Positions 6,601-33,504 of a DNA stretch of 64,000 nt are shown piece after piece (positions within the stretch are counted from its first letter, which is position 1; each line of letters starts with the position of its first letter). This stretch comes from Selaginella moellendorffii (taxonomy: Eukaryota; Plantae; Lycopodiophyta): positions 230,244 to 294,243 of the forward strand of contig NW_003314331.1 of assembly GCF_000143415.4 (NCBI RefSeq). The letters are read 5' to 3'. The notes beneath the pieces were generated by a model, which had not been told where the DNA came from, searched no databases, and was given only the letters and a program-made list of their open reading frames with translations. Made by a program: the position numbers and the translations under genes.

Positions 6601-7320
6601 TCCCTCTTCCAATCCAAAGCTCCCTCTCCTCTCGCAAGAGCAAGCAGCAGCATTGCCGCGGCCATCGCCCTCCAAAGTTCCTGGAGGAGGAGGAGGAGGA
6701 GCTCTCCACTCTTTCTCTACAGTGCCAACTTTGCTATCATCCAGCGATGGAGGAGGAAGGACTCCAACCAGCGGAGGAACTCCACTCACTTGCCGCTTGA
6801 CTTGCTCCTCGAGCGTCCCGGAGCCGCGCAGCACCGATCGATTGTCCCGCGACGCCGCCGCGTAGAAGGATTCCTCGTCGAGAATCCGGCGCCGCTTGCT
6901 CTCCGCCTCGCTGCGCTGTGACGAGAGCGACTCCATCTCCTCCTTGAGCAGCTGGACTGCATTGCTGTGACTGGATTCCCACTGCCTGGCCAGCCCGGAG
7001 AGCTGCCCGACTCCCACATTCGTGGAGCCAACCAAGCTCGACAGGTAGCTCGAATCGGCGATGCCCGCCTCGCCCGCCAGGGATACGTTGTCCGGCTTCT
7101 GCGACAAGCGCTTCTCCCAATTCAGGTCGGGTGGCCACATCGAAGATCTCTTCTCTAGGCTCCCGAGCTCGTCCTGGGAGTGCACGCGATGATCGATTCC
7201 AGCTTCCAGCTTGATTGTGATGATCGCGCAGAGCCAAATTCCCCGCAGGGAAGAGATGGTGTGATCGATTCTTCTTCTTACCTCTTTGATCTTACTCCTC
7301 TCGTCACCCACATTGGGCAT
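3666..7320 (-). CDS. Hybrid sensor histidine kinase, cytoplasmic AHK5/CKI2-like (coiled coil, PAS-like, HisKA, HATPase, receiver)
   Basis: H box [15 protein letters not shown]; [14 protein letters not shown]; G1 DTGIGIP; [19 protein letters not shown]; receiver LLAEDNKVN...D...[10 protein letters not shown]...MTANA...KP. No TM or CHASE domain seen. Confidence 0.92.
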
Positions 7321-9812
7321 TCACCGCGACGATGGAGACGACCACCCTGGATTTTCGTGGCGAATTCCCGAATCCGCGATCGACCCACTAAATCCGGGGC
7401 GCGGAGGCGACTGCCCACATGGATCGATCCGCGCGGCGGCGCTCCTGCCGGGAGCCCACATCGATCGTGTCATGGAGAATCTCCCAAAAGAAGCATTTTT
7501 ACTTTTGAGAGGAAGTGTTCCTAGGATCACGGATCACGGAGAGACTATAAAGTCTGATGGATGGAAGGAAAAGATTCTTCACGCTTGGAAGCTTGATCGC
7601 TCGAGCGAGCTCCTTCCAAATTGGTGAATGCCTTCCTTTTTCGAGGCATCTACGGTGTTCTTTTCCCTCTTTTTTTTTGGTGTGTGAGTGTGTTGATGCC
7701 CACTGCTGGTGCATGAATCGCACTGTGGACGGATGGAAGACATCTCCCGGGCCCTCTGAAGAAACTAAAAAACTATACCAAGTTAAACAACCATTTGAAG
7801 GGGAAAGTCCTAAGAACTAAAAGCAAAGAGAAACCATACCACATTTCCAACACAAACAACATCGATGTCCTTGTTGCGCCCAAAAGTTACTACACCACCG
7901 AGAGCGAGCTTTTCACCATGTCCGCAAACCTGGAGAAATCGCAGGATCAAAACGCTTTCATCGTCTCATTCATTCGCTGTCAGTGTTTTTACCTCGTTCT
8001 TCCATTTTTTAAACTTGCTTGCTTCCACTAGCTACGTTGATCCAAGGCACACCATCATCCACGTTCAAGCGCTCTCCTTCCTGCCGTGTAAGATGCAAAT
8101 TCATGGATTAAACAAAGTTTCTACGAGCCAAGTCACAACACATGCTTGGAGAGATCGGATCGGCTCTTCAAAGCTTTTTGACAGCCGCTTCGAGAAAACA
8201 CTCGCAAGGATAAGGGAAGCTCATTCGACACACAAAAAGTATGCAAGCCAAGCAAGACAGAAGAAAAAAACACTTTGCTCACGAGCGTTCCTGGCTCTAC
8301 CAACACGAGTGACAAATCCATGGTCACAACTTAAGGCTCTTCGCTCTTGGCACTTTTGCTGGCTGGAGCAGCTTGTTTACGATTAAACAAGGCTAGTGCT
8401 GGTTGGAAGGTCACGCTCATTGACAAAGGCATGTTGAGCGAGAAAATGATGAACATGGGGTGCCAATGGGACCAGAAACTTCCATGCTTTGCTGTAGGAT
8501 TAGGCAACGATTACATACCTCACCTTGTTTTAGCCTTGTTCTTCGCTTGTGTTCTGTTCGTTTCTCTCGAGTTCCCATGCCTGCCTGTTAAAAGAAGAAA
8601 AACAAAGGAAGTTTAGATGGTGATCTTAGTGGAACTCATAAGCGGGTGGCAAGTGGAGCTCAAAAACAATGATGGATGTAATCACGAGGAGGAGAATAAA
8701 AAGACTATAACGAGACAGAAACGCTGCTCTGCATGGACCCAGAAAAGCTTAGTTTTGTCCTGGAGCATCCAGGAAGACTGTAAAAACTACGCTGGCTGCG
8801 AGAACTAAACAAACGCGAGAGCTTACGAGCCCACGTTCTCGACACAAAAACTAACCTCGAAACGCTGGTGGTTGGGAGGCACCGCAAGCTCCCCGCCTCT
8901 ACAAAAGCAAAAAAGCCTAGCGTTAGTGCAAGGTAGTCGAGCAAGCATGCACGGGCCAGCAGCATAAGAAGAGAAAAAAACGCGAAAAGTGAAAGAGAAA
9001 AGAAGAGTGCTCACCATGGATGGCTGCTGCTGTGCTGGTGTCTATCCATTCAAGGAGATGTTGCCATCGTTACGGTTTTAAAATGCGGGTCAAAACGGGG
9101 TCTCACCTTGTTTTTGTTCCTGGAGGGTGAGGACGACTTGTGTGAAGGAGCAACAACGTAAAAAATGAAGAGGATCACCTTTGTGCGGGATATACCAGCG
9201 CCTATCGAATACCGTGACCCGACGTTTCAGGAATTGGCAGCAGCCGAAAGTGTCCGACTTAACAGCGGAGAAAGCTCAGCCTGCCAGAAGGGAAATCTTT
9301 GTTAGTTACTGATAAGAAAGAAAGACAACAACGCAACCTGAGATGGAAGTGAAAGTAAAACAAGTCGTTTCTCTAAAACAGTAGCGTCAGTCAGTCGAGC
9401 ATTCAATCGTTCCCATGACTGTTTCCCATGACTATGGAGCTTTGTCTTGGAGCTGTAAATCCGACTCACCTCGCGCATAGATGTTGGACATGAGAGAGTA
9501 CGCGGAGCCTGTTCCATCGTCGAGCTTGAGAACCGACTGGAAAGCCATCCTGCCAAGCTCCACATCTCTCCACTTGAGGCATGAACTTAACAGCGCCGTC
9601 CACAGCACCGTGTCCGCCTTGCAAGGCATCGCCTCCACGGTCTTGAGCGCTTCGTCTAGCCGATTTGCCCGGCACAGAAGATCCACCAAGCAAGTGTAGT
9701 GCTGGACGTTTGGAGCCACTCCATACTCGCTGCTCATGGCCTCGAAGAACTCGCGTCCCTTGTCAACCAGCCCGGCGTGGCTGCATGCCGTGAGCAGCGA
9801 GACAAAGGTGAA
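6779..9812. repeat. Segment A: kinase 5' exon, upstream region and PPR 3' end; direct copy at 17415-19427, inverted partial copy at ~45800-48277
   Basis: Near-identical sequence and repeated ORF translations (e.g. 7321..7530 vs 17944..18153; 8705..8965 vs 46646..46906). Confidence 0.92.
9432..9812 (-). pseudogene. 3' fragment of the 827-aa PLS-type PPR gene
   Basis: TFVSLLTACSHAGLVDKGREFF...DLQLQDKAP matches the end of 19047..21530 and 43697..46180. Homology stops abruptly at ~9812. Confidence 0.88.
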
Positions 9813-10879: not shown

Positions 10880-11945
10880 AGCTTCCACAGCGTTTTCGCG
10901 AGAATGCTGCAAGCTTTGACTGTCGCCAACAATCTGGAGAGCAGTTTTGCGTCACCATGGCATCGACGCTGTTCACAATGTCTATCAAGCCTTGGATCGG
11001 CCGGGTAAGCAAGAGCAAGCCTACTCGATATCTCTTCTCTTACGGATTTTCCTTGTTTATCGAGATGAACTTAGTGTTTGTTTTCTAGCCAAGCGATTTG
11101 CTTTTTTTCTTTTCTGATCCCAAGTCTTTGTTTTCCAGGTTTGCCAGGATCCAAGATGGGGCCGATGCTTCAGGAGATGCTACAGCGAGAAGCCGCAGCT
11201 CGTCAAGGCTATGACGACGATTATCTCGGGGCTTCAAGGTGAGGCCCCTGCCAAAGGAGTTCTATGCGTCGGAGAATGACCAAGAGTTCTTACAACTTTT
11301 TCTTTTGGTTTTCCTAGCTGCGGCTTGCTCCAAGCACTATGAACTGTGCCAACAGGAATTCGTGATCCCTGATTGGCAAGGCATTGACAGGATCACAAAA
11401 CCCGGCACATACTTACACAGTTCTCGTCTCAGTGGAATTGACATGGTGAGAAATGCGTGCTTCTTCTCTCCCAGTTTACCAACCGGAGCTCTCTTTTTTC
11501 TACTCGTTTCTCCAGAAGATAATGACTTCTTGCTTCATCATGGTGCCCCGTACGAGTACACCAAGTTCATCGGCACTCTGACGTCTCTGGTGAAGGAAGG
11601 TTTCATCTCCATGGACAGGATTGATGACACGGTGCGGAGACTTCGCTTTGTGATGTTCTCGGCAGGTTTGATCGGCGTAAGCGGCCCTCGAAGCTCAAAC
11701 TTTCGGATTTTTATACGTAAGCTTTCCTGCTAGGCTCACAGAGATCACTGAGCAAAACAGCCTCGAAGGCCCTCGTTGCTGGCAGCAATCTCGGGAATCA
11801 ATGGCTCCTCGTCGGTGAAAGGTGACTTTGTGATCGTCGTGGTCGTACACAAAGACCCACCCACAGGACGGAGCCAATGCGATCGTCTGGTTCTCTTGAA
11901 AAACGGCAAGGATGCCAAGTATCCGCTGCTGCCCGTGGCTGCTAA
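10880..11945 (+). pseudogene. Glycoside hydrolase family 3 (beta-glucan exohydrolase / beta-glucosidase) degraded fragments
   Basis: GIDAVHNVY, CQDPRWGRC, KAMTTIISGLQG, ACSKHY, DWQGIDRI, GIDMV, ISMDRIDDTVRR, LVLLKNGK, with large deletions and frame breaks. Confidence 0.82.
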
Positions 11946-12069
11946 GACGATCTCGCGTTATTTTTTATGACACGTCCTCAAAAGGTATGGTTGTGATCCT
12001 TTTGGTCAAAGGGATCTACCAAAAAAAGGTATAAATTCCCCCTCCAGGATTTTGTAAATTTAGGGTTTG

Positions 12070-12912
12070 ATGGCAGAAGCTTTTGGAAGGTTATATGGGG
12101 ATCAAGGGTTGGAGAAGAAAATCAATGTTCTTTGGGATTCTGGTAGTGAGTGTGATTTTATTTCAGAAAGACTAGTCAACGAATTTAATATTACTGTGGA
12201 TATTAATTCACGGGTTAAAGATTTCAAGTTCATGGTGGAAGATTGTGAATTGAAAACAACTCTGACTGTCCTACCAGTGATTCTTGATCACGACATAATT
12301 TTAGGTTCACCTTGGATGCATCAACATTGCTTAAAATTGGATTGCAGTGGCAATATAAATAATCTAACTTTTGAGGTAAATGGTATTATATATTGCCTCA
12401 GGGGTAATTACAATTTATTCAAGTCTAGAAAATACAAAAGAATAAATCAGCATATATGTCCTCCTTTTTACGACGTGGAGTATAAGGGGAGAATCAATGA
12501 TCATCAAATCAGAATTGAATTAGATAATGGTTGTGATATATCAGCTATATCACTTGATCTTCTTAAGAAACTTGGAATTAAAGCAGTTCAGAATCAGAAG
12601 TATTTTGGGAAAAGGTTAACTGCAAAAGTTCAACTAAAATATGGTTATGGAGCTGAGAATTTATTTTATAACTTGGGAGGTTTTTCAGAAAGTAGAACTT
12701 TTCTTGGTATAGTAGATTATTCAGAGAGCATATATCTTGGGATGGACTGGCTTAAGAAACACTCAGCAGTAATTGATTATAGAAATCATACTGTTACTTT
12801 TAGAAGTGAATTGGGCTGGTGGTATAGATTTCAATATCCACATGGTATATATGAAGTGAGTAAAGATAAATTTACAGAGGAGATGAGTAGTTTATGTTGG
12901 TGCTTAGTTTAA
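12070..12912 (+). CDS. Intronless protein with two tandem retropepsin-like aspartic protease domains (copy 1, intact, 280 aa from ATG)
   Basis: Domain 1 VLWDSGSECDFIS...DIILGSPWMHQH. Domain 2 IELDNGCDISAIS...IYLGMDWLKKHSAVIDY. AT-rich; TATAAAT and telo-box TAGGGTTT just upstream of the ATG. Confidence 0.8.
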   Translation: MAEAFGRLYGDQGLEKKINVLWDSGSECDFISERLVNEFNITVDINSRVKDFKFMVEDCELKTTLTVLPVILDHDIILGSPWMHQHCLKLDCSGNINNLTFEVNGIIYCLRGNYNLFKSRKYKRINQHICPPFYDVEYKGRINDHQIRIELDNGCDISAISLDLLKKLGIKAVQNQKYFGKRLTAKVQLKYGYGAENLFYNLGGFSESRTFLGIVDYSESIYLGMDWLKKHSAVIDYRNHTVTFRSELGWWYRFQYPHGIYEVSKDKFTEEMSSLCWCLV

Positions 12913-13692
12913 TTAAGCACTTATTGTAGCAATTTAATTCACAAAATTATTCACTAAAATAAATCTATATTATGAGTGCACCACCTCACACTAGAATTCT
13001 TATTTGCATAGATAGAAATAATTGTGTTTTGTGGTGAGAGAAGGGAACTTTCAAGCGGGGGAGGAAAGAGGGAAGTTGCACTTGCCCTGGGAAGTGAAGG
13101 CATGACATTGGTTTGAAGATTTTTGGCCTCAACATCTTTTTTTTCTTCTCAGCTAGAAGCTCTCCTCGCTCCCAAGCGATCAAGTTATGAATCGATCACT
13201 CTGTCAGTCAGTACCGAGCTAGAATTATCCGGCTGCCACACCGACATCGGGGATACTGTGTGCTGAGTTAAGTGCATTACCTCATCCGAGCGCCTTTTTA
13301 TCGTTTCCCTTTGATGTCTTCTAGCTGTATGACTGAAGAACTGATCCAGATGCTTGTTGTTCGCAATGCTGACGTTGCAAGAGAAGATAGAGGCGACAAA
13401 AGAGAAACGATTGATTGCTGCTTTGGGATCCACTTAGCGCTGGATGGCCTGGATGAATCACTTTTGAGATGCTCGCTTTGACACCCTCGTCACCCGGATA
13501 TTTAAAGCAAAAACTTCCATGAAGAAAGAAGATTTACCACGCTCTGATGAAGCGGAACCACCATTCCCATCTCCTCATCTCGCAAAATCTCGCGTCTCGA
13601 CTTCCCACCTACATCTACCACAACACAAACAAGCAAGCAAAACCACGGCGAGAACAAATCCCAGGCTCGCAATCTCTCACTCGATCCATAGA

Positions 13693-13912
13693 TCAGCGCT
13701 TGCCGCCACCGCCGCCAAGCTTGGGCCCCTTGGAAACAGGCCCCCGCTGGATGGGGGCTTTCACCTTGGTGGCCTTGGAGAGCACCTCGGCCTTCTTCGC
13801 CTTCTTCTCGTCCTTGGTCTTCTTGATCCTCTCCTTGATCTCCTTGAGCGCCGCCTGGCGCGCAGCCTCCCTCACCTCCGTCTTCTCGGCCCGCTTCTTC
13901 TGGATCACCTCA
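13693..13912 (-). pseudogene. RPL24: 60S ribosomal protein L24 (eL24) C-terminal exon fragment
   Basis: [41 protein letters not shown]...[11 protein letters not shown]. The N-terminal exons are absent. Confidence 0.85.
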
Positions 13913-13989
13913 CATTTGACACGTGGCGTGCCCACATTCGAGCGTACAAACCGTATGATACCGGCTTCCGGTCGACCTCTTGTGAGAGG

Positions 13990-14628: not shown

Positions 14629-14645
14629 AGTAGATACAGGGTTTG

Positions 14646-15390
14646 ATGGCAGAAGCTTTTGGAAGGGATCAAGGGTTGGAGAAGAAAATGAATGTTCTTT
14701 GGGATTCTGGTTTTAACTGTGATGCTATTTCACAATGATTAGTCGACGAATTTAATATTACTGTGAATAATAATTCACAGGTTAAAGATTTCAAGTTCAT
14801 GGTGGAAGATTGTGAATTTAAAACAACTCTGACTGTCTTACCAGTGATTTTTGATCACGACATAATTTTGGGTTCACCTTGGATACATTAACACTGCTTA
14901 GAATTAGATTGCAGTGTCTAATGTTTGAGGTAAATGGTATTATATATTGCCTCATGGGTAATTACAATTTAATCAACTATAAGGGTGATCATCAAATCAG
15001 AATTGAATTAGATAATAGTTGTGATATATCAGCCATATCACTTGATCTTCTTAAAAAAATTGGAATTAAAGCAGTTCAGAATCAGAAGTATTATGGGAAC
15101 AGGTTAACTGCAAAAGTTCAACTAAAAGATGGTTATGGAGTTGAGAATTTATATTATAACTTGGGAGGTTTTTTAGAAAGTAGAACTTTTCTTGGTATAG
15201 TAGATTATTCAGAGAGGATACATCTTGGGATGGACTGGCTTAAGAAACACTCAGCAATAATTGATTAAGAAATCATACTGTTACTTTTAGAAGTGAATTG
15301 GGCTGGTGTATAGATTTCAATATCCACATGGTATATATGAAGTGAGTAAAGATAAATTTACTGAGGAGATGAGTAGTTTATGTAGTTTAA
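14646..15390 (+). pseudogene. Tandem-retropepsin gene copy 2, disrupted
   Basis: Closely similar to 12070..12912 with deletions, an in-frame TGA and frameshifts. The second motif reads DNS. Confidence 0.85.
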
Positions 15391-16261
15391 TTAAGCACGT
15401 ACTGTAGCAATTTAATGCACACAACTATTCACTAAAAGAAATTATATTGTCCTAATCTTGATGCGAGATTTATGAAGCAAGGGAGTGCACACCCTTCACA
15501 CTGAATTGTGTTTATAGTGTTAGCGAGAGCATGGGATTTTGGATAAAAAGGGGAGGAAAGAGAGAAGTTGCCTTTCAGGCACTTGCTAAATGTTTCTGTC
15601 TGGGAAGTGAAGGCATGATGTTGCTTCGATAAGTGCCCTCCAGTCTTCCATGGCATGTAGATAGAGAGCAGTTGTTGTTGCTGTGGCCACATGAATGTGG
15701 GAGGTCGTGACAATAGAATTCCATTGTGGGGAAGAAGAGCTGTAGCTGCACGTATATGGGATGTGAAAGGGTCTTTCTTTCTGTCTTGCACAGTGGGTAG
15801 AAACAGGCATCTCTGGTCATGACCTGCATTTGTCTTCGGCCCAGTTTGACGTGAAGTGAGTGTGGGCTTGTTGGTATTTTGCGAGGATGCACCTGGTGTT
15901 GTTGACATATTGGAGACTAGAAATTGCCTAGTAGAAGCGAGAAGTTTGAATATACTTTTTAGTTGATCAACTTGATTGCCTTATGTCCTAGGCAAAGGCA
16001 TTTTACCATAGTTGCATTCCAGGGAGTGATTGGCTCTCCTAGGGCAGATAAAAGCTTCATTTCAGCTCCCCTGTTTAACGTCCTACACTCTCATCTTACG
16101 TTTGGACTGCTCACAGGTGTGGAAGTATTGGACAGATGGTGCTGGAAATCTGATCGTGTGTTCATGGCGGCTGACCCGACGTCCGAAAACGCAATCCCAG
16201 CTAATACCGAGTATCAGGCTTTGGAGTGTTCAGTACTGGTTTAATCCTCGGTTTTCTTGTA

Positions 16262-17414: not shown

Positions 17415-17943
17415 TGACTCCACTCACTTGCCGCTTGACTTGCTCCTCGAGCGTCCCGGAGCCACGCAGCACCGATCGATTGTCCCGCGACGCCGAGAAT
17501 CCGGCGCCGCTTGCTCTCCGCCTCGCTGCGCTGTGACGAGAGCCACTCCACCTCCTCCTTGAGCAGCCGGACTGCATTGCTGTGACTGGATTCCCACTGC
17601 CTGGCCAGCCCGGAGAGCTGCCCGACTCCCACATTCGTGGAGCCAACCAAGCTCGACAGGTAGCTCGAATCGGCGATGCCCGCCTCGCCCGCCAGGGATA
17701 CGTTGTCCGGCTTCTGCGACAAGCGCTTCTCCCAATTCAGGTCGGGTGGCCACATCGAAGATCTCTTCTCTAGGCTCCCGAGCTCGTCCTGGGAGTGCAC
17801 GCGATGATCGATTCCAGCTTCCAGCTTGATTGGTTGGATGTGATGATCGAGCAACGCCAAATTACTCGCAGGGAAGAGATGGTGTGATCGATTCTTCTTC
17901 TTACCTCTTTGATCTTACTCCTCTCGTCACCCACATTGGGCAT
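17415..17943 (-). pseudogene. Truncated duplicate of the histidine kinase first exon
   Basis: Matches 6779-7320 with small indels (deletion near 17492) and is truncated at 17415. Confidence 0.88.
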
Positions 17944-19046
17944 TCACCGCGACGATGGAGACGACCACCCTGGATTTTCGTGGCGAATTCCCGAATCCGC
18001 GATCGACCCACTAAATCCGGGCCGCGGAGGCGACTGCCCACATGGATCGATCCGCGCGGCGGCGCTCCTGCCGGGAGCCCACATCGATCGTGTCATGGAG
18101 AATCTCCCAAAAGAAGCATTTTTACTTTTGAGAGGAAGTGTTCCTAGGATCACGGATCACGGAGAGACTATAAAGTCTGATGGATGGAAGGAAACGATTC
18201 TTCACGCTTGGAAGCTTGATCAAGCTCGAGCGAGCTCCTTCCAAATTGGTGAATGCCTTCCTTTTTCGAGGCATCTACGGTGTTCTTTTCCTTTTTTTTT
18301 TTGGTGTGTGAGCCACTGCTGGTGCATGAATCGCACTGTGGACGGATGGAAGACATCTCCCAGGCCCTCTGAAGAAACGAAAAAACTATACCAAGTTAAA
18401 CAACCATTTGAAAGTCCTAAGAACTAAAAGCAAAGAGAAACCATACCACATTTCCAACACAAACAACATCGATGTCCTTGTTGCGCCCAAAAGTTACTAC
18501 ACCACCGCGAGCGAGCTTTTTACCATGTCCGCAAACCTGGAGAAATCGCAGGATCAAAACGCTTTCATCGCGAGCAAGCATGCAGCATAAGAAGAGAAAA
18601 AAACGCGAAAAGTGAAAGAGAAAAGAAGAGTGCTCACCATGGATGGCTGCTGCTGTGCTGGTGTCTATCCATTCAAGGAGATGTTGCCATCGTTACGGTT
18701 TTAAAATGCGGGTCAAAACGGGGTCTCACCTTGTTTTTGTTCCTGGAGGGTGAGGACGACTTGTGTGAAGGAGCAACAACGTAAAAAATGAAGAGGATCA
18801 CCTTTGTGCGGGATATACCAGCGCCTATCGAATACCGTGAACCGACGTTTCAGGAATTGCCAGCAGCCGAAAGTGTCCGACTTAACAGCGGAGAAAGCTC
18901 AAGAAGGGAAATCTTCGTTAGTTACTGATAAGAAAGAAAGACAACAACGCAACCTGAGATAGAAGTGAAGTAACACATGTCGTTTCTCTCCAACAGTAGC
19001 GTCAGTCAGTGGAGCATTAAATCGTTCCCATGACTGTTTCCCATGA

Positions 19047-21527
19047 CTATGAAGCTTTGTCTTGGAGCTGTAAATCCGACTCACCTCGCGCATAGATGTT
19101 GGACATGAGAGAGTACGCGGAGCCTGTTCCATCGTCGAGCTTGAGAACCGACTGGAAAGCCATCCTGCCAAGCTCCACATCTCTCCACTTGAGGCATGAA
19201 CTTAACAGCGCCGTCCACAGCACCGCGTCCGCCTTGCAAGGCATCGCCTCCACGGTCTTGAGCGCTTCGTCTAGCCGATTTGCCCGGCACAGAAGATCCA
19301 CCAAGCAAGTGTAGTGCTGGACGTTTGGAACCACTCCATACTCGCTGCTCATGGCCTCGAAGAACTCACGTCCCTTGTCAACCAGCCCGGCGTGGCTGCA
19401 TGCCGTGAGCACCGAGACAAAGGTGACGCCGTCTGGACGTACTCGTTCACGCTTCATGGCCTCGAAGAGCTCAAAGACCCGCAGGCTGTCGCCCTGGCTG
19501 CTGTATCCCGCCATGAGAGCACTCCATGCCACCACCGTCTTGTCCGTGATTGCCTCAAACGCCTCCTCGGCTTCGGCCATGCTTCCACACCTCCCGTAGA
19601 AGCTAACGAGAGAGCTTCCCACCGATGGCTCTGTATCCAGTCCAGCGCTGCAAGCTTGGACGTGAATCTGCTGCCCGAAGTCCAGTGCTGCAAGGCTGGC
19701 GCAGGCTTTGAGAACAGCAACGTAAGTCACCCCGTCCGGTTCCAAGCTTTTCGCTTGCAGCAACCGAGTGTAAAACTCCAAAGCTCGCTCGGGTTCTCCA
19801 CACTGACTGTATCCCAAGATCATGGAGTTCCAAAGAACAAGGTCCCGACCTTTGATGCTGTCGAAGACTCCCCGAGCATCCTCCATGCTTCGACACTTCG
19901 TATACATATCCACCAGGACACTAGCAAAGTAGACATCCAGTTCGCAAATCCCTGCGACTTGCAAGTGGAGAGCTCTGCCTTTTTCCAACCATTTCTTCAC
20001 AAGCTTGCCGTCTTCTTTCTCCGTTAGAGTCGCAACAGCCTTAAATGCAGTAGTAGCAGTGACATGATCTCCCTTAACACCTTCCTCTTGCATGCTTTCA
20101 AACGATTGTAAGACGAGCTTGTGCTGGCCGCCGCAAGCATACCCCAGGATTATCCCCGTCCAAGATATCACATCTCGCACCACCATATCTTCGAAAACCA
20201 GCCAAGCATCCACCATGCTTCCACACTTGGCGTACATGTCAACGAGAGCATTATGAACAGAGAGGTCTTCTCCGTCCACAAAAGCGAGAGCTCGAGCATG
20301 CACGGCCTTGCCTCTCTCCAAAGCCCGAAGCTTAACGACGCCTCCGTCGACAATCTGGCCCTGTTCCTTCTCAGCCAAGGTGACGCAGGCCTTTAGTGCA
20401 GCAAGAACTGTGACACGATCTGGAGCGCAACCATTCTCATCCATGCTAAAGAATATCTCAAGAGCTTGCTCGCCTTTGCCGTTCTGAGCATAACCAAGAG
20501 TGAGGCAGTTCCAAGAAACCACGTCTGGACGTTCAATACTGTCGAACAAACTGCGAGACTCCACCATGCTCCCACACTTGGCATAGAACTCCACGAGTGT
20601 GTTGGTCACTAAGATGTTTGACGAGTGCTCACCAGCTTCCAAGTGAACGGCCCTTCCTTTTTCCAAGCTCTGAATCTTCAAGACTTGCGTTTCTTCTTCA
20701 CCATGAACAACTGTCCCAAGTTCCTCGTCTGCGAGACAGCAACAAGCTTTCAGTGCTGCGATGAAAGTTAAAGCATCCGGTGGAGTGTCTCCACGACGCA
20801 TTCGAGCATAGATATCGAGAGCTTCACCACCCTCGCCGCTGCCGGCATACCCGAGAATCATGCAGTTCCATGTCACCACACTACGATGGCTCATTCCTTC
20901 GAAAACTCGACGAGCCTCTGTCAAGCTCCCACATTTTGCGTAAAGATCAATCAACGTGCTCGCGACGAAGAGATCCGAGTCTATGCCAAGTTTTACTGCT
21001 TTCCTGTGAATCTCCCTGCTCCTCTCTAAGAATACCACCCGTCGACCATCCAAAGCCTGCCCGGAATCCTTCTCTATCAAGCTGGAACAAGCCTTGAGAG
21101 CACCAAGAACTGATACTCGATCCGGTTTGTACCCTTCGTCTTCCATACGAGCAAACAACTGTAGAGCCATGTCACCGTTTCCACTATGTGCATATCCCTG
21201 TATGATCGAATTCCAGGAGACAACATCGCGATGCGGCATGCTGTTAAATGCTGCACGGGCATCTATCATGCTTCCGCATTTCGCGTACAGATCAAGCAGG
21301 ATGTTGGCGACGATAATGTTTGAGAAGTCACCTGTCTCGGAAACATCCCTGTGAATTCTCCTGCCTAGTTGTAGATCTCTCATGCTTCTACATACCTTGA
21401 GAGCGCCAACAACAATGCCAATGGCTGGTTTCAATTCCTGACGTTGCATTCGTCTGTACACTGCAAGAGCATCCTCATCTGAAAGACCCTGAGGTTTCTG
21501 CAGAAGTGGACCAACCTTCGTTTCCAT
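19047..21527 (-). CDS. PLS-class PPR protein with E-like extension, no DYW
   Basis: Repeated LxDxYAKCGS / VVSWNxxIxGYA / PDxVTFxxxLxAC motifs; C-terminal PNVQHYTCLVDLLCRA...W.ALLSSC. Confidence 0.93.
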   Translation of the reverse strand: METKVGPLLQKPQGLSDEDALAVYRRMQRQELKPAIGIVVGALKVCRSMRDLQLGRRIHRDVSETGDFSNIIVANILLDLYAKCGSMIDARAAFNSMPHRDVVSWNSIIQGYAHSGNGDMALQLFARMEDEGYKPDRVSVLGALKACSSLIEKDSGQALDGRRVVFLERSREIHRKAVKLGIDSDLFVASTLIDLYAKCGSLTEARRVFEGMSHRSVVTWNCMILGYAGSGEGGEALDIYARMRRGDTPPDALTFIAALKACCCLADEELGTVVHGEEETQVLKIQSLEKGRAVHLEAGEHSSNILVTNTLVEFYAKCGSMVESRSLFDSIERPDVVSWNCLTLGYAQNGKGEQALEIFFSMDENGCAPDRVTVLAALKACVTLAEKEQGQIVDGGVVKLRALERGKAVHARALAFVDGEDLSVHNALVDMYAKCGSMVDAWLVFEDMVVRDVISWTGIILGYACGGQHKLVLQSFESMQEEGVKGDHVTATTAFKAVATLTEKEDGKLVKKWLEKGRALHLQVAGICELDVYFASVLVDMYTKCRSMEDARGVFDSIKGRDLVLWNSMILGYSQCGEPERALEFYTRLLQAKSLEPDGVTYVAVLKACASLAALDFGQQIHVQACSAGLDTEPSVGSSLVSFYGRCGSMAEAEEAFEAITDKTVVAWSALMAGYSSQGDSLRVFELFEAMKRERVRPDGVTFVSVLTACSHAGLVDKGREFFEAMSSEYGVVPNVQHYTCLVDLLCRANRLDEALKTVEAMPCKADAVLWTALLSSCLKWRDVELGRMAFQSVLKLDDGTGSAYSLMSNIYARGESDLQLQDKAS

Positions 21528-21759
21528 CAAGGACAGATTATGGATTCTACGAAGGCCGTAGTAAGAAACGATAAAGCGAGCTCAAAATTTTCATACCTCG
21601 AGCCTGATCAGTTCACCGCTGCTAAACAACCTGCAGCGTTTCAAGTTCCTTCAATGCAGCAAGATCGCTTGACTTATCCCTCGACAAGCACCAGCTCTAC
21701 GTCAATATCTTTGCAAGAAAAATTAAAAAATCACGAAACGAATAGCCAGATACCTGTGT

Positions 21760-22966
21760 TTAGACACGCTGCAGCATTTCAAGTTCTTTCTCCAGCCACT
21801 GCAATGCAGCAAGATCGTTTGACTTGTCCCTGGACAAGCACCACTCAACTGGTAGCTCTACGTTAATATCTCTGCAAGAAAAAGGAAATAAGAACATCAC
21901 CTGGATGCTAGAAAAGAATAGCCAGTTACCTGCGTAAGGACAAAACTTCCAAGTTTTTCTCAAGCAACACGGAATGCTCCTTGAGAGCATCTTGTATGTA
22001 GGGCTTCCCAACCGTCCGAAATGCCGCTGCACTTAATAGATTTTCTAGCGAGCCGTGCTTCCTCATAAGTTTCAGAGCTGTTTTCCGTCCAAACCCAGGC
22101 ACACCGGGAACACCATCAGCAGCATCCCCTAGCAAGCATCCTTGGAAAGAATTTTTTTTTGGAATAATCAGCCAAACTTACGAAACTGGATACTTACGAA
22201 GTCCCAATTCAATCCCAGGCTCGCATTTGTGTTGTTCAACGTAATCCTTGACTGTGTAAAATGACCACCTTCGTAGATCCGCGAACGGAATCAGCAGCTC
22301 GACGTTTTCCGAAACAAGCTGCTTGAAATCTTTATCTGGAGATGCAATGACTGCTTTCAAACTCCTGTCGTTAACTTGCCGAGCTAGTGTCGCAATGACG
22401 TCGTCCGCTTCAACATTATCAACTTTCACAACCTGTCAGCAATGAACTTCGTTTTAGCTCATGGAAAAAGGAAGAATGAAAGATCGAGGACTTACAGGTA
22501 TGTTACACTGTCGAAGAAAGCATTGGAAACGAGAGAAACTCGCCTCTAAACCTCTTGTCCATTTGAAGCTCGGATCTAGAGGCTTGAATTTCCTCCTTCC
22601 AGCCTTGTAAGAAGGAAGAATTTTTCTCCTATAGTCATTCCCAAATTCGCCATCGAAAACCTGCGCTACACACTCGCATTTCATCCAATCCAGCAACAAC
22701 AAAACGAGACTTACAGCAATCACTGGATCGTCAAGCACAATCCTGCGAAGAAACGCTCTCATCCACCACAAAAACTCGCTGGAATCCGGCTTGCTCCCGC
22801 GGTAGCACAGCGGATGGACGTCCAAGACATAGACCCTGCTCACAGATTTCCTGGCAAATCCGATGGAATCCGTCCGGGCGCCACCAAGAACTGGCGATTC
22901 CGAGCGGGAGCGCGCTGCGCGATCCAAGGCGCTGCCGCCATGGCATTGGACAAGATTCACTAGCAT
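21760..22966 (-). CDS. Organellar 5'-3' exonuclease (DNA Pol I N-terminal / FEN-like; OEX2-like), 5 exons
   Basis: LDVHPLCY, VFDGEFG...YRRKILPSYKAGR, EADDVIATLA, IASPDKDFKQL and the H3TH motif GDAADGVPGVPGFGRKTALKLM. Confidence 0.9.
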
Positions 22967-23072
22967 TGTACCCTAGGTCCTAAAAATATTTCAAACGAAA
23001 TGGTGATCGTGTTCCTCGGAAGAACTCGATCGATTCGATCGATCGACAGCTACATTCCTAGCAAGAGTCGAA

Positions 23073-23516
23073 TCAAAACACACGAGTGCCACTGGTGCGG
23101 CAGAAATCCGAGCGCAAGCTCGCAGCTACGTGCGACACATCCGCGGCGCCATTATATTCATAACTGGGCACTCGCTCGATCGAGAAAGAGCTAAATCTCT
23201 CGCGGCTAAGCGCCCGGACCTGGCGCCACAGCGCCTGCGTGAGAGGGCTCCGGGCGTACCACTCCGCCGAGACGTGGTTGACAACGAGCTGGGAGTCGCC
23301 ATAGACGTGGAGGATGGAGACGCGGAGGCGGGAGGCGGTGTGGAGGCCGGCGACGAGCGCGCGGTACTCGGCCTCGATGATGGGGGCGCCGGGCCCGAGG
23401 TAAATCCCGCCGTGGGCGACCTCGGCATCGCGGTAATCGAGGAGGAGGAAGCCGCCGGCGGTATGGCCATTGGGGAGGCGTGTACCGTGGAAGTAGAGGG
23501 CGTGACGCACGGACAT
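23073..23516 (-). CDS. RNase HI-like protein, intronless, first catalytic Asp replaced by His
   Basis: LYFHG (vs consensus FDG), EAEYRALVAGL, VYGDSQLVVNHV, NGAAD. TATATA about 35 bp upstream of ATG 23516. Confidence 0.8.
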   Translation of the reverse strand: MSVRHALYFHGTRLPNGHTAGGFLLLDYRDAEVAHGGIYLGPGAPIIEAEYRALVAGLHTASRLRVSILHVYGDSQLVVNHVSAEWYARSPLTQALWRQVRALSRERFSSFSIERVPSYEYNGAADVSHVAASLRSDFCRTSGTRVF

Positions 23517-23688
23517 GGTGGCAGCATGGCGGACGTGGAGGGGCAAACCTATATAGGCGCGACACGTGTCTTTTTTAACAAAGTGACGTGGTAAGCTTAG
23601 TTAAAAGGCTTCCTTTAGGGCAAATAGCATAAATTGCTTCCTTTAAGCTTAAAATGCTTCCTTTTAGGGCAAATAGGAGCTATGTCGT

Positions 23689-25826
23689 GTGATTTGCGGG
23701 ATGTGGAATCGTGGATTTCGCAGTGGCGCCTCTTCCAATTCGATGAGAAGAAGAAGAAGAAGAATTTTCGTCCAGGAAGGAGAATGCGAGAGCTCCAGCA
23801 GAGTGTCGATGATTCTGGCCGCCTTGAGAGCGACAAGGGTTTCACGGGACATCGATCGCGGCAGGCAAATCCACGATGAAGCGGCGGGCATAGGCTGCGA
23901 TTCCCACCCCCGAGTTGCCAGCGCGCTGATCGCGATGTATTCCAAGTGCCACAGCATGGCGGAGGCGCGTGGGGTGTTTGATGCGCTGGAATACCCCGAT
24001 GTGGTGTCTTGGAACGCGATCGTGCTGGGCTACGCCGAGAATGGGGACGGATCCAACGCGCTTGAGCTCTTTTCCAGGATGGGATCGTCACCAAATGAGA
24101 GGAGCTTTGTAGCAGCGCTCAAGGCGTGTAGCTCCATCGCGGCTCTGGACGATGCGAGAAAGGTCGAGGCTCTGGAGATGGGAGTTTGGATCCATTGGAG
24201 AGCTTCCATGGCTGGATGCTGCGACTCCAACGTCTTTGTCTCGAATTCTCTGGTGGACATGTACGCGAAGTGTGGGAGCATTGTCGAAGCGCGTAGGATT
24301 TTCGATGGAATGGAAGCTCCCAGCGTTGTCTCCTGGAACGCGCTGTTGCTTGGCTTTGCTGAGAACGGGCAGGAGGAACAGGCTCTAGCTTACTTTGCGA
24401 AGATGGTCCATGACGACGATCACTCCACCATGAAAGCTTGCCGACCGGATTCTCGGACTTTCGCAGCTCTGGCCAAGGCTTGCTCGAACTTGGCGATCAA
24501 GGAGGGTGGCGAGGAGATCCATGGACGAACTGTCAAGCTCGAGTCTCTGAGAAAAGGTATGGATCTTCACGCCTCATCTTTGAGACTTGGATGTAGTTTT
24601 GACGATGTGTTCTTGGTCAGTGCGCTTGTGAGCATGTACGCTAAATGCGGGAGCATGACCGACGCTGGACGAGTTTTCAGCCGAGCTGCTCGTCTCGACG
24701 TCGTCTCGTGGAACTCTCTCATACTCGGCTATGCCGAGAACGGGGAAGAGGAGACAGCTTTGGAGATCTTCACCACCATTTTTGCGACATGCTGTGCTCC
24801 GACGGCTTTGAGCTTCGTCGCTGCTCTCACGGCGTGCATCAGCCTGGCTGCCAAGGAAGAAGCTCGAGTTATCGATGGAGGAAAGCTCGCCAAGATCCGG
24901 TGCCTGGAGAGAGGAATGGCTGTTCATGCTCAAGCGTTGGAACTGGGTCTTGACACGGAAAGCTACGTTGCGAGCAGACTCGTCACCTTGTATGCGAAGT
25001 CTGGAACCTTGGCCGATGCTTGGAGAGTCTTCACCACAATGCCAAGTTACGATCTCGTCTCGAGCACTGCACTGATGCAAGCCTGCGTTGACAACGAAGA
25101 ACTGGAGCTGGCTCTCGAGATCTATGCTCTCTGCCACGACAATCGAGAGCTTTGTGGTCTCCAGAGCAGGGACGCTGGAGTCTTGGTGACAGCACTCAAG
25201 GCCTGTGGAGATCTTGCGGCACTAAACGCTGGAAGACAGGTCCATGCCGACGTTTGCCTGAGTGGAGTCGAGGAAAATCCAGCTTTACGATCCTGCCTGG
25301 TGGATTTCTACAGCAAATGTGGAAGCATGGTGGATTCACAGGTGTTCTTCGATTCATCCGCAACAAGAAACTCAATAGCCTAGACGGTGCTCATTGCCGG
25401 ATACAACTATCCAGGGAGCTCAGCACAGGTTTTTGAGAACGAGAGACGAAGGTTTCCAAGCAGACACTGCGACTTTGTGCTGCATCATCACTGCTTGTAA
25501 CTGCTCGGGCCTCGTCGAAAAAGGCAACAAGTTTTTCGACGCAGTGGTCTCCAAGCACGAGACTGTGCCAGACCGAAACTTGTATCACTCGGCAATTGAC
25601 ATGCTGGGTCGAGTGAACTTCTTCCAAGAGGCGATTGGTCTCGCGAAGGCAATGCCGTTTACGCCGACGTCCCGGACTTGGACGACGCTCCTCGGCACAT
25701 GCTCAAAGTGGAATAATGTCGAGGTGGCTCGGTTTGCAATTTGGGAAGTTTTTGGAGCTGGAAGACAGGGGTGATAGCTCGGCTTACATCCTCATGGCGA
25801 ATATATTCAACAGCTGGAAGAGGTAA
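23689..25826 (+). pseudogene. PLS-class PPR gene, disrupted copy of 39407..41548
   Basis: Premature TAG at 25381 where the other copy has Trp, plus downstream frameshifts. Confidence 0.85.
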
Positions 25827-26289
25827 CCATTCAGAAAATCAGTTCGACTAAAGAAACATGCCTGGTATTATGAAATACGTGGTTGTTGACACAAGATCTG
25901 TTTTGAATATCTCAACAAGGGTGGAGTAAAACAATGTCAGGATGTTGATGTAGGGCACACAACATTTAGTTGTAGCAAGGTCTCATGGACTTTGTGAAGG
26001 CACAACCTATTGTGTTTCGAGCATCATTGAAGCGCACAGGATTTTCAAGCTGAAGAGCTTTACGAAGATGGTCCATGACCATCACTCCACCATGAATGTT
26101 TGCCCAAGGCTTGCTCAAGATCCATCGATGAATCAAAGGTCTGGATCTTCAGGCTTTTTTTTTGTGCTCTTGGTCAGTTCTTGATTATACAGATCACGGC
26201 CTTTAGGAGGAATTCTACAAACTACAACTTGAATAAGCGGGTATATGATCTGAAAAAGAAATCATGCTACCATTGCTTTAAAGAGATAG

Positions 26290-32400: not shown

Positions 32401-32658
32401 ATCTCTGGCTGTAGAGCTTGCAGGCTGATATAGAATGCATGGCATAGCAAAAATTATATATATCCTCTTTTTACTAACTTTTACATTTATTAAAACAAAT
32501 TACATATACAGAGTTTCCCATAGTTAATGCACCCCATAGTGCTTCAAAGGAATTACCAACAATGGAAGGGCATCAAAAAAGCCACAATCTCGCAATGCAT
32601 GAAAAACAAATCACACTACAAATGGATTGTGCAAAAGAAGTGTTTATTAAATTTGTGG

Positions 32659-33504
32659 TCAGATTAAGCACCAACACAAACTACTCATCTCTTTGCTAAA
32701 TCTATCTTTACTTGTTTCATATATACCAGATGGGTATTGAAATCTATACCAGCAATCCAACTCTTTGGATCTAAAAGTGACAATATGATTCCTGTAGTCA
32801 ATTATTGCTGAGTGCTTATGAAGCCAGTCAATCCCAAGAAATATGATCTCTCTGGAATCTTCTATACCAGTAAAATTTCTTCTTTCTAAAAAGTTTCCCA
32901 AGTTATAACATAAATTCTCAACTCCATAACCATGTTTCATTTGAACATCTGGAGTTAGCCTTTCTGCGAAATACTTGGAATCATGAACTACTTTAACCCC
33001 AAGTTTCCTGATAAGTTTAAGTGATATTCCAGAACTTGCACAACCATTATCTATTTCAATTCTGATATTCTGATCATTGATTCTCCCACTGTACTCTACG
33101 TGATGAAAAGCAGTACATATATGTTGATTTATTCTCTTGTATTTTCTGGACTTAAATAAATTGTAATCGCCCATGAGGCAATATATGGTACCATTAACCT
33201 CAAATGTTAGAGTACTTATAGTGCCACTGCAGTCTAACTCTAAACAGTGTTTATGTATCCAAGGTGAACCCAAAATTATATCATGATCTAGAATCACTGG
33301 TAAGACGGTCAAAGTCCTTGTAACTTCACAATCCTCTATCATAAACTTGAAATCCTTAACTTGTGAATTACTGTCGACAGTAATATTAAACTCATCCACC
33401 AACTTCTGAGAAATAACATCATCACAACAACCAGAATCCCAAACTATATCCAGTTTCCTTTCAAGCCCAGAGTCTCCAACTAACCTTCCAAAAGCTTTTG
33501 CCAT
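32659..33504 (-). CDS. Tandem-retropepsin gene copy 3 (intact, 281 aa)
   Basis: IVWDSGCCDDVIS...DIILGSPWIHKH and IEIDNGCASSGIS...IFLGIDWLHKHSAIIDY. Collinear with copy 1. Confidence 0.8.
   Translation of the reverse strand: MAKAFGRLVGDSGLERKLDIVWDSGCCDDVISQKLVDEFNITVDSNSQVKDFKFMIEDCEVTRTLTVLPVILDHDIILGSPWIHKHCLELDCSGTISTLTFEVNGTIYCLMGDYNLFKSRKYKRINQHICTAFHHVEYSGRINDQNIRIEIDNGCASSGISLKLIRKLGVKVVHDSKYFAERLTPDVQMKHGYGVENLCYNLGNFLERRNFTGIEDSREIIFLGIDWLHKHSAIIDYRNHIVTFRSKELDCWYRFQYPSGIYETSKDRFSKEMSSLCWCLI

What the first reader, a model, noticed from the sequence alone, without database searches (positions are those of the whole stretch)
12070..12912. Family of stand-alone, single-chain double-retropepsin genes (best candidate for a novel system)
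Seen: an intronless, much more AT-rich ORF with two successive retropepsin signatures, D-S-G...ILGxPW and D-N-G...LGxDWLxxH.A.ID. It occurs as two intact collinear copies (12070-12912 +, 32659-33504 -; about 70% identical by hand count over the first 100 aa), two pseudogenes (14646-15390, 48880-49651) and a fragment (~48305-48440). No gag, RT, integrase or LTR is recognisable beside any copy. Established: retropepsins (clan AA, LTR-element/Ddi1 type) have one Asp per chain and must homodimerise, while pepsins are two-lobed single chains. Inference: this is a domesticated or captured protease that fused a dimer into one chain, independently of pepsins, and is now undergoing birth-and-death evolution. 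Keeping the frame, length and both Asp residues through ~30% divergence implies purifying selection.
Basis: partly seen in the sequence, partly recalled or inferred. Interest (0 to 1): 0.82.

Follow-up and report, generated by a model that had tools for sequence, protein, structure and literature searches.

The report
Orphan two-lobed retrotransposon-type protease ORFs
A spikemoss carries a small family of unannotated reading frames that fuse two retrotransposon-type protease domains into one chain; they were clearly kept by selection in the past, but today they look silent and transposon-like, so a working enzyme is possible but unproven.

Summary
The genome is Selaginella moellendorffii. The window has two intact ORFs of 280 and 281 codons (12070-12912 +, 32659-33504 -), 72% identical, plus two pseudogenes and a fragment.

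Both halves are retropepsin homologues:
- The C half is a complete domain with D-N-G.
- The N half has D-S-G but lacks the roughly 16-residue flap hairpin.
- A pairing test of the two halves gave only weak support.
- The AlphaFold model does not show canonical dimer geometry.

Purifying selection is real but old. Omega is about 0.27 on the branch joining the two copy pairs (p = 1.5e-8). The terminal branches look near-neutral.

Arguments against a working gene:
- All copies are AT-rich and strongly CpG-depleted (o/e about 0.2 against about 0.9 in flanks), as silenced transposons are.
- Three RNA-seq runs gave essentially no reads.
- No full-length relative appeared among 1.84 billion protein representatives.

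Arguments for one:
- The intact copies have no indel or stop, while their sister copies have 6 and 7 indels.

Best reading: a lineage-specific, retroelement-derived tandem-protease ORF family, now mostly decaying. A still-working gene is the main rival.

The scan noted the same kind of ORF on other pieces of this genome. One earlier follow-up called it a relic. Unrelated tandem retropepsin proteins exist in public data, so the fusion is not unique.

The parts
12048..12069 (+). Conserved 5' leader shared by all copies. It contains a telomere-repeat-like motif (TTTAGGGTTTG) directly before the ATG. A TATAAA lies at 12032-12037.
   Evidence: Similarity between copies begins about 20 nt before the ATG. 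The motif plus ATGG is found at four copies, 5 matches against 0.26 expected by chance. The TATA sequence was read.
12070..12912 (+). Copy 1: intact 280-codon ORF for the tandem retropepsin, the finding itself.
   Evidence: ORF list. Pfam RVP_2 1.3e-9 in two stretches, Asp_protease_2 4.6e-7. AlphaFold model with mean pLDDT 74.
12070..12405 (+). N lobe (residues 1-112). Retropepsin-like, with D-S-G at 12136-12144 and I-L-G at 12298-12306. The flap hairpin is missing (about 16 residues).
   Evidence: RVP_2 E 8.8e-5 on the half alone. hhalign of the N-half family against the retropepsin family gives 99.5% probability, E 3.3e-23, with a 16-column gap at the flap position. pLDDT is 81-92 for residues 1-87, with the strand and helix order of a retropepsin.
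12406..12483 (+). Basic linker (residues 113-138). The stretch from Y114 to C130 is identical in copies 1 and 3.
   Evidence: Alignment and sliding identity. Predicted with pLDDT under 50.
12484..12837 (+). C lobe (residues 139-256). A complete retropepsin domain with flap region, D-N-G at 12523-12531 and L-G-M-D-W at 12736-12750.
   Evidence: Profile match to ASPRV1 over the full domain (query 139-248; 9-119 of the 136-residue chain 27jo_A). VIA-align Z 13.2, rmsd 2.4-2.5 A over 113 residues to Ddi1 RVP domains. Asp_protease_2 and gag-asp_proteas hits.
12838..12909 (+). Conserved C-terminal tail (residues 257-280). It has no family match.
   Evidence: 75-80% identity between copies 1 and 3 in sliding windows. 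No Pfam match.
12913..12971 (+). 3' trailer shared by copies 1 and 2 only. It contains AATAAA at 12958-12963.
   Evidence: Similarity between copies 1 and 2 ends at 12971/15448. Sequence read.
14630..15448 (+). Copy 2: pseudogene, sister of copy 1, 86-93% identical in DNA. It has six indels, including a 66-nt deletion, and several stops.
32659..33504 (-). Copy 3: intact 281-codon ORF. D-S-G and D-N-G are both kept.
48852..49672 (-). Copy 4: pseudogene, sister of copy 3 inside a larger segmental duplication. It has seven indels and stops. Its N-terminal part is used as the last exon of a public gene model (P0001).
   Evidence: P0001 is encoded on GL377635.1 of GCA_000143415.2.
48308..48640 (+). 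Fragment 5: the last about 60 codons plus the 3' flank of the copy-3 type, lying tail to tail with copy 4.

Best explanation
These are members of a Selaginella-specific ORF family derived from a Ty3/gypsy-type retroelement. Each encodes two very divergent retropepsin domains in one chain. The N lobe is flapless and carries D-S-G. The C lobe is complete and carries D-N-G. A basic linker joins them.

The family evolved as a coding unit under purifying selection for most of the time separating the two copy pairs.

The copies in this window are now treated by the genome like transposon DNA. They are AT-rich, CpG-depleted, silent in the sampled RNA, and spread by local and segmental duplication. 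They are drifting, and copies 1 and 3 are simply not yet broken.

If the protein is made, the most likely mechanism is intramolecular pairing of the two lobes into one two-Asp active site covered by a single flap, as in pepsin.

Shown: the ORFs, the domain homology of both halves, the old selection, the composition signature, and the lack of reads. Inferred: the retroelement origin, methylation, present-day neutrality, and the pairing of the lobes.
For: Domain identity:
- RVP_2, Asp_protease_2 and gag-asp_proteas hits.
- The nearest feature-space clusters are all RVP_2-type retrotransposon proteases.
- C lobe Z 13.2 to Ddi1 RVP.
- The N-lobe family matches retropepsins at 99.5% by hhalign.

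Old selection:
- dN/dS is 0.25-0.39 between copies 1 and 3.
- The internal branch has 38 synonymous and 41 non-synonymous changes, omega 0.27, p = 1.5e-8.

Present-day drift:
- Terminal branches: copy 1 4/10 and copy 3 9/23 (synonymous/non-synonymous; omega about 0.6, not different from neutral). The pseudogenes show 2/12 and 8/27.
- The branches of copy 3 and copy 4 are equally long, 32 and 35 substitutions in the codon count (36 for copy 4 in the per-base count).
- Substitution divergence between the copy 3 and copy 4 ORF regions is 12.6%, against about 6% in most of the co-duplicated flanks.

Transposon-like state:
- CpG o/e is 0.17-0.24 in all copies, against 0.84-0.99 in flanks and host genes.
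- Gene-body methylation is reported absent in S. moellendorffii (PMC5037628), so ordinary host genes should not be depleted this way.

Silence:
- Depth is essentially 0 over copies 1 and 2 in three RNA-seq runs (0 in every bin but one, 0.23). The gene just upstream has depth 2-12 and a nearby exon about 150.

Orphan status:
- No word-search homologue.
- Only 31 weak hits among 1.84 billion representatives, none full length.
- Nothing in viral or metagenome contigs.

Passenger spread:
- Copies 3 and 4 lie in a duplication covering 32520-39123 and 48754-53442.
Against: - Copies 1 and 3 have no indel and no stop, while their sisters have 6 and 7 indels. Given equal branches, the chance of 0 against 7 is about 0.008, and of 0 against 6 about 0.016.
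- Random substitution alone would leave copy 3 open only 15% of the time, and copy 1 36%. This asymmetry is what selection for an open frame would give.
- The linker and the C-terminal tail are unusually conserved.
- The RNA data come from one study of unknown tissue range, read at 12% depth.
- A possibly-RNA run (X1) holds a perfect 160-nt contig at 12042-12201 at low depth.
- Methylation was inferred from CpG depletion, not measured.
Confidence: 0.5

Rival explanations
1. Copies 1 and 3 are still working, lineage-specific host genes. They would be a domesticated single-chain aspartic protease, or a protease-derived binding protein, expressed only in tissues or conditions not sampled. They would be evolving fast under weak constraint, with the pseudogenes as normal birth-and-death losers.
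For: - Open frames with no indel or stop, while sister copies collected 6-7 indels.
- Probability of no stop by chance is 0.15 for copy 3 and 0.36 for copy 1.
- Both Asp motifs and both hydrophobic-hydrophobic-Gly motifs are kept in both copies.
- Overall dN/dS is 0.25-0.39, and 0.14 in the N half.
- The 5' leader motif is conserved in all copies, and AATAAA lies after the stop.
- The two halves are predicted to fold (pLDDT 72-77) and to pair: ipSAE 0.60 against 0.00 for the best of three controls. The tool rates this as weak support. Its mark was reached by 51 of 78 solved complexes and 2 of 108 mismatches, but at 0.60 or under by only 5 of those 78 solved complexes and by all 4 mismatches that passed (of 180, the harder ones counted). 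The runs agree in at least 66% of contacts, and the partner's pLDDT is at least 71.
Against: - Terminal-branch omega is about 0.6 and not distinguishable from the pseudogenes. There is no slowdown of copy 3 relative to copy 4.
- The ORF region diverged faster than its flanks.
- The composition is CpG-depleted and AT-rich, unlike host genes.
- There are essentially no RNA-seq reads.
- No gene model exists and no homologue appears in any annotated proteome or transcriptome-derived protein set.
- D-N-G replaces the Ser/Thr that normally follows the catalytic Asp in the C lobe.
Confidence: 0.33
2. The roughly 0.9-kb unit (leader, ORF, short trailer) is itself what gets copied. One way is retroposition of its own mRNA by the machinery of other elements. 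Another is as the coding module of an undescribed small mobile element. In either case the selection acts on the unit's ability to spread.
For: - Similarity between copies 1 and 2 (86-93%) stops sharply about 20 nt before the ATG and about 60 nt after the stop, just past an AATAAA, although the copies lie only 2.5 kb apart.
- The composition changes exactly at the unit borders.
- Earlier scan notes, not checked here, report the family dispersed on several other scaffolds.
Against: - No poly(A) tail, target-site duplication, terminal repeat or inverted repeat is seen at the borders.
- Copies 3 and 4 were plainly copied with their flanks.
- The sharp borders between copies 1 and 3 are equally expected from old divergence (dS about 0.65). 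Those between copies 1 and 2 could come from gene conversion between neighbours.
- A protease alone gives no known means of transposition.
Confidence: 0.12
3. The ORFs are chance open frames, or an annotation-style artefact, in AT-rich repeat DNA.
For: No public gene model, no expression and no close homologues.
Against: - A 281-codon frame at 33% GC has a chance near 3e-10 (arithmetic).
- There are two such frames, with an excess of third-position changes (49/41/82).
- Significant family matches and confident domain models.
Confidence: 0.01

Closest known systems
Ty3/gypsy (Metaviridae) retrotransposon proteases, Pfam RVP_2 / gag-asp_proteas (MEROPS A2-like, clan AA)
   Same: Both halves match these models best. 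They carry the Asp-Ser/Thr-Gly type loop, the hydrophobic-hydrophobic-Gly motif followed by D-W-L, and the 'ID...V.F' strand typical of plant gypsy proteases.
   Different: - Those proteases are single domains inside gag-pol polyproteins and act as homodimers (PMC2642776).
- Here two very different domains sit in one 280-residue chain with no gag, RT or integrase nearby.
- The N domain lacks the flap.
- The nearest polyprotein hits are weak (E about 1e-5).
Eukaryotic stand-alone retropepsin-like host proteins: Ddi1 RVP domain and ASPRV1/SASPase
   Same: They are the best structural and sequence matches of the C lobe (Z 13.2 to Ddi1; profile E 0.0014 to ASPRV1). They are precedents for retroelement-type proteases kept as host genes.
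   Different: They have one protease domain per chain, act as homodimers, and are widely conserved and expressed. This family is confined to one lineage, has two domains per chain, and has no sign of expression.
Pepsin family A1 (two-lobed single chain)
   Same: The architecture is analogous: two homologous lobes, one Asp each, and possibly only one flap. The classical idea is that pepsins arose by duplication and fusion of a retropepsin-like ancestor (PMC2642776 and PMC2761423).
   Different: There is no Pfam A1 match. Each lobe is about 110 residues, not about 160. Pepsin-like chains (plasmepsin II) appear only far down the Foldseek list, with TM about 0.27-0.30.
Engineered tethered HIV-1 protease dimers (e.g. 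1HVC, 1G6L, 2O40)
   Same: They are a single chain holding two retropepsin units. Foldseek aligns about 241 columns of the model to them (E about 2e-6).
   Different: They are artificial. TM-scores are only 0.27-0.37 and rmsd 8.5-10 A, so the model does not reproduce the canonical dimer geometry.
Other natural tandem retropepsin proteins in sequence databases (P0013, 425 aa; P0022, 308 aa)
   Same: They have two Asp_protease_2 / gag-asp_proteas domains in one chain. This shows that the fusion as such recurs in nature.
   Different: They are unrelated in sequence beyond the domain family (E 7e-5 and 3e-4). Both domains are complete and carry D-T/S-G. Their sources are uncharacterised assemblies. 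My paper searches found no description of them.

Membership tests
Retropepsin-like domain (clan AA; Pfam RVP_2 / Asp_protease_2) | Significant profile match for each half | tested here: met
   - N half alone: RVP_2 22.8 bits against a cut-off of 20.3.
- C half alone: Asp_protease_2 25.5 bits against 24.3.
- hhalign of the N-half family against the C-half family: 99.5%.
Retropepsin-like domain (clan AA; Pfam RVP_2 / Asp_protease_2) | Catalytic Asp-Thr/Ser-Gly loop | tested here: inconclusive
   The N lobe has D-S-G in both intact copies. The C lobe has D-N-G in both. Asn at this place is rare among the hits (one of 39). Whether it allows catalysis is not testable here.
Retropepsin-like domain (clan AA; Pfam RVP_2 / Asp_protease_2) | Hydrophobic-hydrophobic-Gly motif followed by a helix | tested here: met
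   I-L-G at 77-79 with helix 80-88. Y-L-G at 222-224 with helix 225-230.
Retropepsin-like domain (clan AA; Pfam RVP_2 / Asp_protease_2) | Flap beta-hairpin over the active site | tested here: not met
   Not met for the N lobe: it has a 16-residue gap against its own nearest family at the flap position, with only 9 residues between helix 33-38 and strand 48-56. The C lobe has the region (169-192).
Retropepsin-like domain (clan AA; Pfam RVP_2 / Asp_protease_2) | Retropepsin fold | tested here: met
   The C lobe gives Z 13.2, rmsd 2.4-2.5 A over 113 residues to Ddi1 RVP.
Functional pseudo-dimeric aspartic protease (two Asp in one site) | The two lobes pack so that both Asp loops face each other | tested here: inconclusive
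   The pairing test of the N half with the C half gave ipSAE 0.60 against 0.00 for the best control, rated 'weak support'. No interface was reported. The AlphaFold pTM is 0.49 and the linker pLDDT is under 50. TM to tethered dimers is only 0.27-0.37.
LTR retrotransposon (Ty3/gypsy) copy | gag, RT/RNase H, integrase and LTRs around the protease | tested here: not met
   The large ORFs of the window are PPR, TPR and glycosyltransferase genes. Flank ORFs have no Pfam transposon domain. No direct repeats bracket any copy except the copies themselves.
Pepsin family A1 | Pfam Asp (A1) profile match and about 320-residue two-lobed chain | tested here: not met
   There is no A1 family among the Pfam hits even at E up to 10. 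The chain has 280 residues with lobes of about 110 residues.
Domesticated host gene | Expression, and purifying selection on present-day lineages | tested here: inconclusive
   Essentially no reads in three RNA-seq runs from one study. Terminal-branch omega is about 0.6, not significant. The absence of indels and stops in the intact copies is unlikely by chance.

The most novel reading that the evidence does not exclude
Copies 1 and 3 encode a working, naturally evolved single-chain retropepsin pseudo-dimer. Its flapless N lobe and flapped C lobe would form one asymmetric active site. That would be an independent and evolutionarily recent replay of the duplication-and-fusion step proposed for the origin of pepsins. 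It would be used by the plant in a restricted tissue or stress, or in transposon control.
Probability: 0.2. Interest if true: 0.75.

Novelty: new variant of a known kind. Interest (0 to 1): 0.45.

Why it matters
[quoted passage not shown] A natural chain with two retropepsin lobes, one of which has already lost its flap, would show that step in progress. It would also be a small, tractable object for structural work.

The family also bears on how retroelement pieces are kept, silenced or lost in an early vascular plant. It may connect to gypsy elements of the same genome that are said to carry three protease-like domains.

As it stands the value is limited. No expression, no activity and no present-day constraint has been shown. 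Tandem retropepsins also exist elsewhere in sequence databases.

Tried and rejected
- **Word-based protein searches.** The whole protein and the N half alone found nothing. An alignment seeded with P0024 gave ten N-half-like proteins.
- **First AlphaFold run.** With only the two copies as alignment it failed, pLDDT 29.
- **Mixed alignment.** All homologues aligned to the C half.
- **Complex prediction.** The tool folded without my alignments and returned 'weak support' with no interface, so the Asp-Asp geometry could not be read.
- **PDB profile search with P0022.** I used it to learn what the top Foldseek hit 9iy9 is. It found nothing, so 9iy9 stays uninterpreted (TM 0.31/0.23).
- **Viral and metagenome contig scans.** No relatives.
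- **Paper searches.** Searches for tandem or single-chain natural retropepsins and for Selaginella protease domestication found no description.
- **Caulimovirid origin.** Considered and set aside: the best families are gypsy-type (RVP_2), and no caulimovirid family appeared among the Pfam hits.
- **LTR-like reading of copies 1 and 2.** Direct repeats around a 1.66-kb spacer could suggest LTRs. Set aside because the repeats are the coding units themselves and the spacer has host-like composition.
- **Copy 3 expression.** Not tested.
Full report
**What is there**

The window comes from Selaginella moellendorffii. A public gene model that overlaps one of the copies (P0001) is encoded on scaffold GL377635.1 of assembly GCA_000143415.2.

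They are 72% identical in protein with a single one-residue gap and 80% identical in DNA.

tblastn with the protein finds five family members in the window and nothing else (frames read):
- the two intact copies;
- a pseudogene at 14630-15448 (+);
- a pseudogene at 48852-49672 (-);
- a 3' fragment at 48308-48640 (+).

The ORFs are 33-35% GC in a window of 47%. At that composition an open frame of 281 codons has a chance near 3e-10 (my arithmetic). The frames are therefore not accidental.

**Both halves are retropepsin domains, but unequal ones**

Pfam RVP_2 matches the whole protein in two stretches. Each half alone still reaches a curated cut-off: the N half RVP_2 at 22.8 bits, the C half Asp_protease_2 at 25.5 bits.

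The C half (residues 139-248) aligns end to end with the solved ASPRV1 and Ddi1 protease domains. In the AlphaFold model it superposes on Ddi1 with Z 13.2 and rmsd 2.4-2.5 A over 113 residues.

The N half has few relatives:
- One metagenomic protein (P0024) came from the exhaustive search, and ten relatives of that protein came from an alignment-seeded word search.
- A profile of that group matches the retropepsin profile of the C-half relatives at 99.5% probability, E 3.3e-23.
- The alignment shows that the Selaginella N half, like P0024, lacks about 16 residues exactly where the flap hairpin lies.
- In the model the N half is confident (pLDDT 81-92 for residues 1-87). It has the same order of strands and helices as the C half, with only nine residues where the C half has its 24-residue flap region.

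The two halves share only about 13-26% identity. This is not a recent internal duplication.

The catalytic loops read D-S-G (N) and D-N-G (C) in both intact copies. Asn after the Asp is rare among the relatives collected, one in 39.

**Do the lobes form one active site?**

This could not be settled.
- A pairing test of the N half against the C half scored 0.60, against 0.00 for the best of three controls. The tool rates this as weak support. Its mark was reached by 51 of 78 solved complexes and 2 of 108 mismatched pairs, but at 0.60 or under by only 5 of those 78 solved complexes and by all 4 mismatches that passed (of 180, the harder ones counted). The runs agree in at least 66% of contacts and the partner's pLDDT is at least 71. 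The pass may also reflect memory of solved retropepsin dimers.
- The single-chain AlphaFold model has pTM 0.49 and a linker under pLDDT 50.
- Foldseek aligns about 241 columns to engineered tethered HIV-1 protease dimers, but with TM only 0.27-0.37 and rmsd 8.5-10 A. The canonical dimer geometry is therefore not reproduced.

**Selection**

Between the two intact copies dN/dS is 0.25-0.39, depending on the method. It is 0.14 in the N half and 0.50 in the C half. Changes by codon position are 49/41/82.

I then placed each change on the unrooted tree ((copy 1, copy 2),(copy 3, copy 4)) by parsimony, over the 223 codons free of gaps in all four.

| Branch | Synonymous | Non-synonymous | Omega |
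|---|---|---|---|
| Internal | 38 | 41 | 0.27 (p = 1.5e-8 against neutrality) |
| Copy 1 (intact) | 4 | 10 | 0.62 |
| Copy 3 (intact) | 9 | 23 | 0.63 |
| Copy 2 (pseudogene) | 2 | 12 | 1.48 |
| Copy 4 (pseudogene) | 8 | 27 | 0.83 |

None of the terminal branches differs significantly from neutral. Copy 3 has changed as much as its broken sister: 32 against 35 substitutions in the codon count (36 for copy 4 in the per-base count).

Copies 3 and 4 lie inside a larger segmental duplication (32520-39123 and 48754-53442). There the ORF region differs by 12.6% in substitutions, while most of the flanking blocks differ by about 6%. The amino-acid sequence has therefore not been visibly protected since the last duplications.

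Against this stands an asymmetry in disabling mutations:
- Copy 2 has six indels and copy 4 has seven. Copies 1 and 3 have none.
- Random substitutions at the observed numbers would leave copy 3 free of stops in 15% of trials and copy 1 in 36%.

That pattern is what selection for an open frame would produce. It keeps the 'working gene' reading alive.

**Composition and chromatin signature**

All five family members have CpG observed/expected of 0.17-0.24. The DNA immediately beside them, the PPR genes and the glycosyltransferase gene have 0.84-0.99. The change coincides with the unit's borders.

Gene-body methylation is reported to be absent in S. moellendorffii (PMC5037628). Such depletion is therefore not what an ordinary host gene would show. 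It is what long-methylated transposon DNA shows, or DNA that evolved in such a lineage. This is an inference; methylation was not measured.

**Expression**

Three paired RNA-seq runs of the species, each read at about 12%, gave essentially zero depth over copies 1 and 2. Every bin there was 0 except one at 0.23. The gene ending just upstream (11300-11890) had depth 2-12, and a lysine-rich exon-like segment at 13652-13945 had about 150.

A fourth run, of uncertain kind, contains a perfect 160-nt contig at 12042-12201 at depth 5.5. It also contains intergenic pieces at similar depth, so this is not evidence of expression. Copy 3 could not be tested.

**Borders and spread**

Similarity among copies begins about 20 nt before the ATG. 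There all copies carry a telomere-repeat-like motif, with 5 matches against 0.26 expected.

Copies 1 and 2 lie 2.5 kb apart and are 86-93% alike. They share only the ORF, this leader and about 60 nt of trailer ending just after an AATAAA. No A-tail, target duplication or terminal repeat is visible.

These sharp borders could mean that the unit is copied through RNA, or that neighbouring copies exchange sequence by gene conversion. The borders between copies 1 and 3 are expected anyway at dS about 0.65.

No gag, RT, integrase or LTR is present. The large ORFs of the window are PPR, TPR and glycosyltransferase genes, and the small flank ORFs have no family.

**Relatives elsewhere**

An exhaustive HMMER search of 1.84 billion cluster representatives found 31 hits at E up to 0.001.
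- The best is P0001, the gene model that runs into pseudogene copy 4.
- All others are generic single retropepsin domains matching one half, at E of 9e-7 or worse. They include gypsy polyproteins, a Tritrichomonas retrotransposon peptidase and Ddi1-like proteins.
- No full-length relative exists there, nor in viral or metagenome contigs.
- Two hits (P0013, 425 aa; P0022, 308 aa) are unrelated proteins that also carry two retropepsin domains in one chain. The fusion as such is therefore not unique, although I found no paper describing natural tandem retropepsins.

The review literature treats retroelement proteases as one-domain dimers and pepsins as the two-domain form (PMC2642776).

**Earlier notes of this scan**

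The same kind of stand-alone tandem retropepsin ORF was noted on several other pieces of this genome (s1-433186, s1-380536, s1-328932, s1-374886).
- One follow-up (s1-433186) judged a 313-codon copy silent, unselected and a passenger of duplications. My results agree on silence and on passenger spread. They add that selection is clear on the deep branch.
- Four unchecked first-reader notes report gypsy polyproteins with three tandem retropepsin-like domains in this genome (s1-398816, s1-420814, s1-346873, s1-332917). If true, they offer a simple source for a ready-made two-domain ORF. I could not fetch those sequences, so this remains a lead.

**Verdict**

The best-supported reading (about 0.5) is a lineage-specific, retroelement-derived tandem-protease ORF family. 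It was once maintained by selection and is now silenced and decaying. A still-functional gene is a serious rival (about 0.33), and a self-copying unit is a minor one (about 0.12).

It is a new variant of a known kind (clan AA retropepsin-like proteins), of moderate interest until expression or activity is shown.

Noticed in passing
window 27000-30000: A 3-kb island of only 17-24% GC with no ORF of 70 codons or more. It contains an internal direct repeat of about 760 nt (27679-28439 and 28645-29402, 75% identical). Its nature is unknown.
   Followed up: partly
window 30000-32600: The 2.6 kb downstream of copy 3 are also AT-rich (35% GC) and as CpG-depleted as the ORFs (o/e 0.20). They have no recognisable coding domain. 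This may be degraded repeat DNA that belongs with copy 3.
   Followed up: partly
window 18582-25841 and 39399-46652: A 7.3-kb inverted duplication, 96.7% identical, carries two PPR genes of E-motif type in each arm. Further copies of a 3-kb block lie at 6779-9811, 17417-19426 and 45801-48277. The whole window is a patchwork of recent duplications.
   Followed up: partly
window 13652-13945 (- strand ORF 13693-13935): A lysine-rich 80-codon segment between copies 1 and 2 collects about 150-fold RNA-seq depth. The reads differ at many fixed positions (95-99% alike) and run on into unlike sequence at both ends. They probably come from a spliced paralogue elsewhere, and the local copy looks like a gene fragment.
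   Followed up: partly
L001 3001-4837; window about 48880-51700 (-): The public gene model P0001 (418 aa) joins an upstream gene to the first 45 in-frame codons of pseudogene copy 4. This is probably an annotation chimera. A paralogue of that upstream gene lies next to copy 3 (33600-35100).
   Followed up: partly
window 12059-12069, 33505-33515, 49652-49662: A plant telomere-repeat-like (telo-box-like) sequence sits directly before the start codon of the copies and is kept across 20% divergence. From my own knowledge, such boxes act in plant promoters and in Polycomb recruitment. This was not tested.
   Followed up: no
window 58626-60216 (+): A gene with Glyco_transf_28 and Glyco_tran_28_C domains is split over two frames, so it probably contains an intron.
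   Followed up: no
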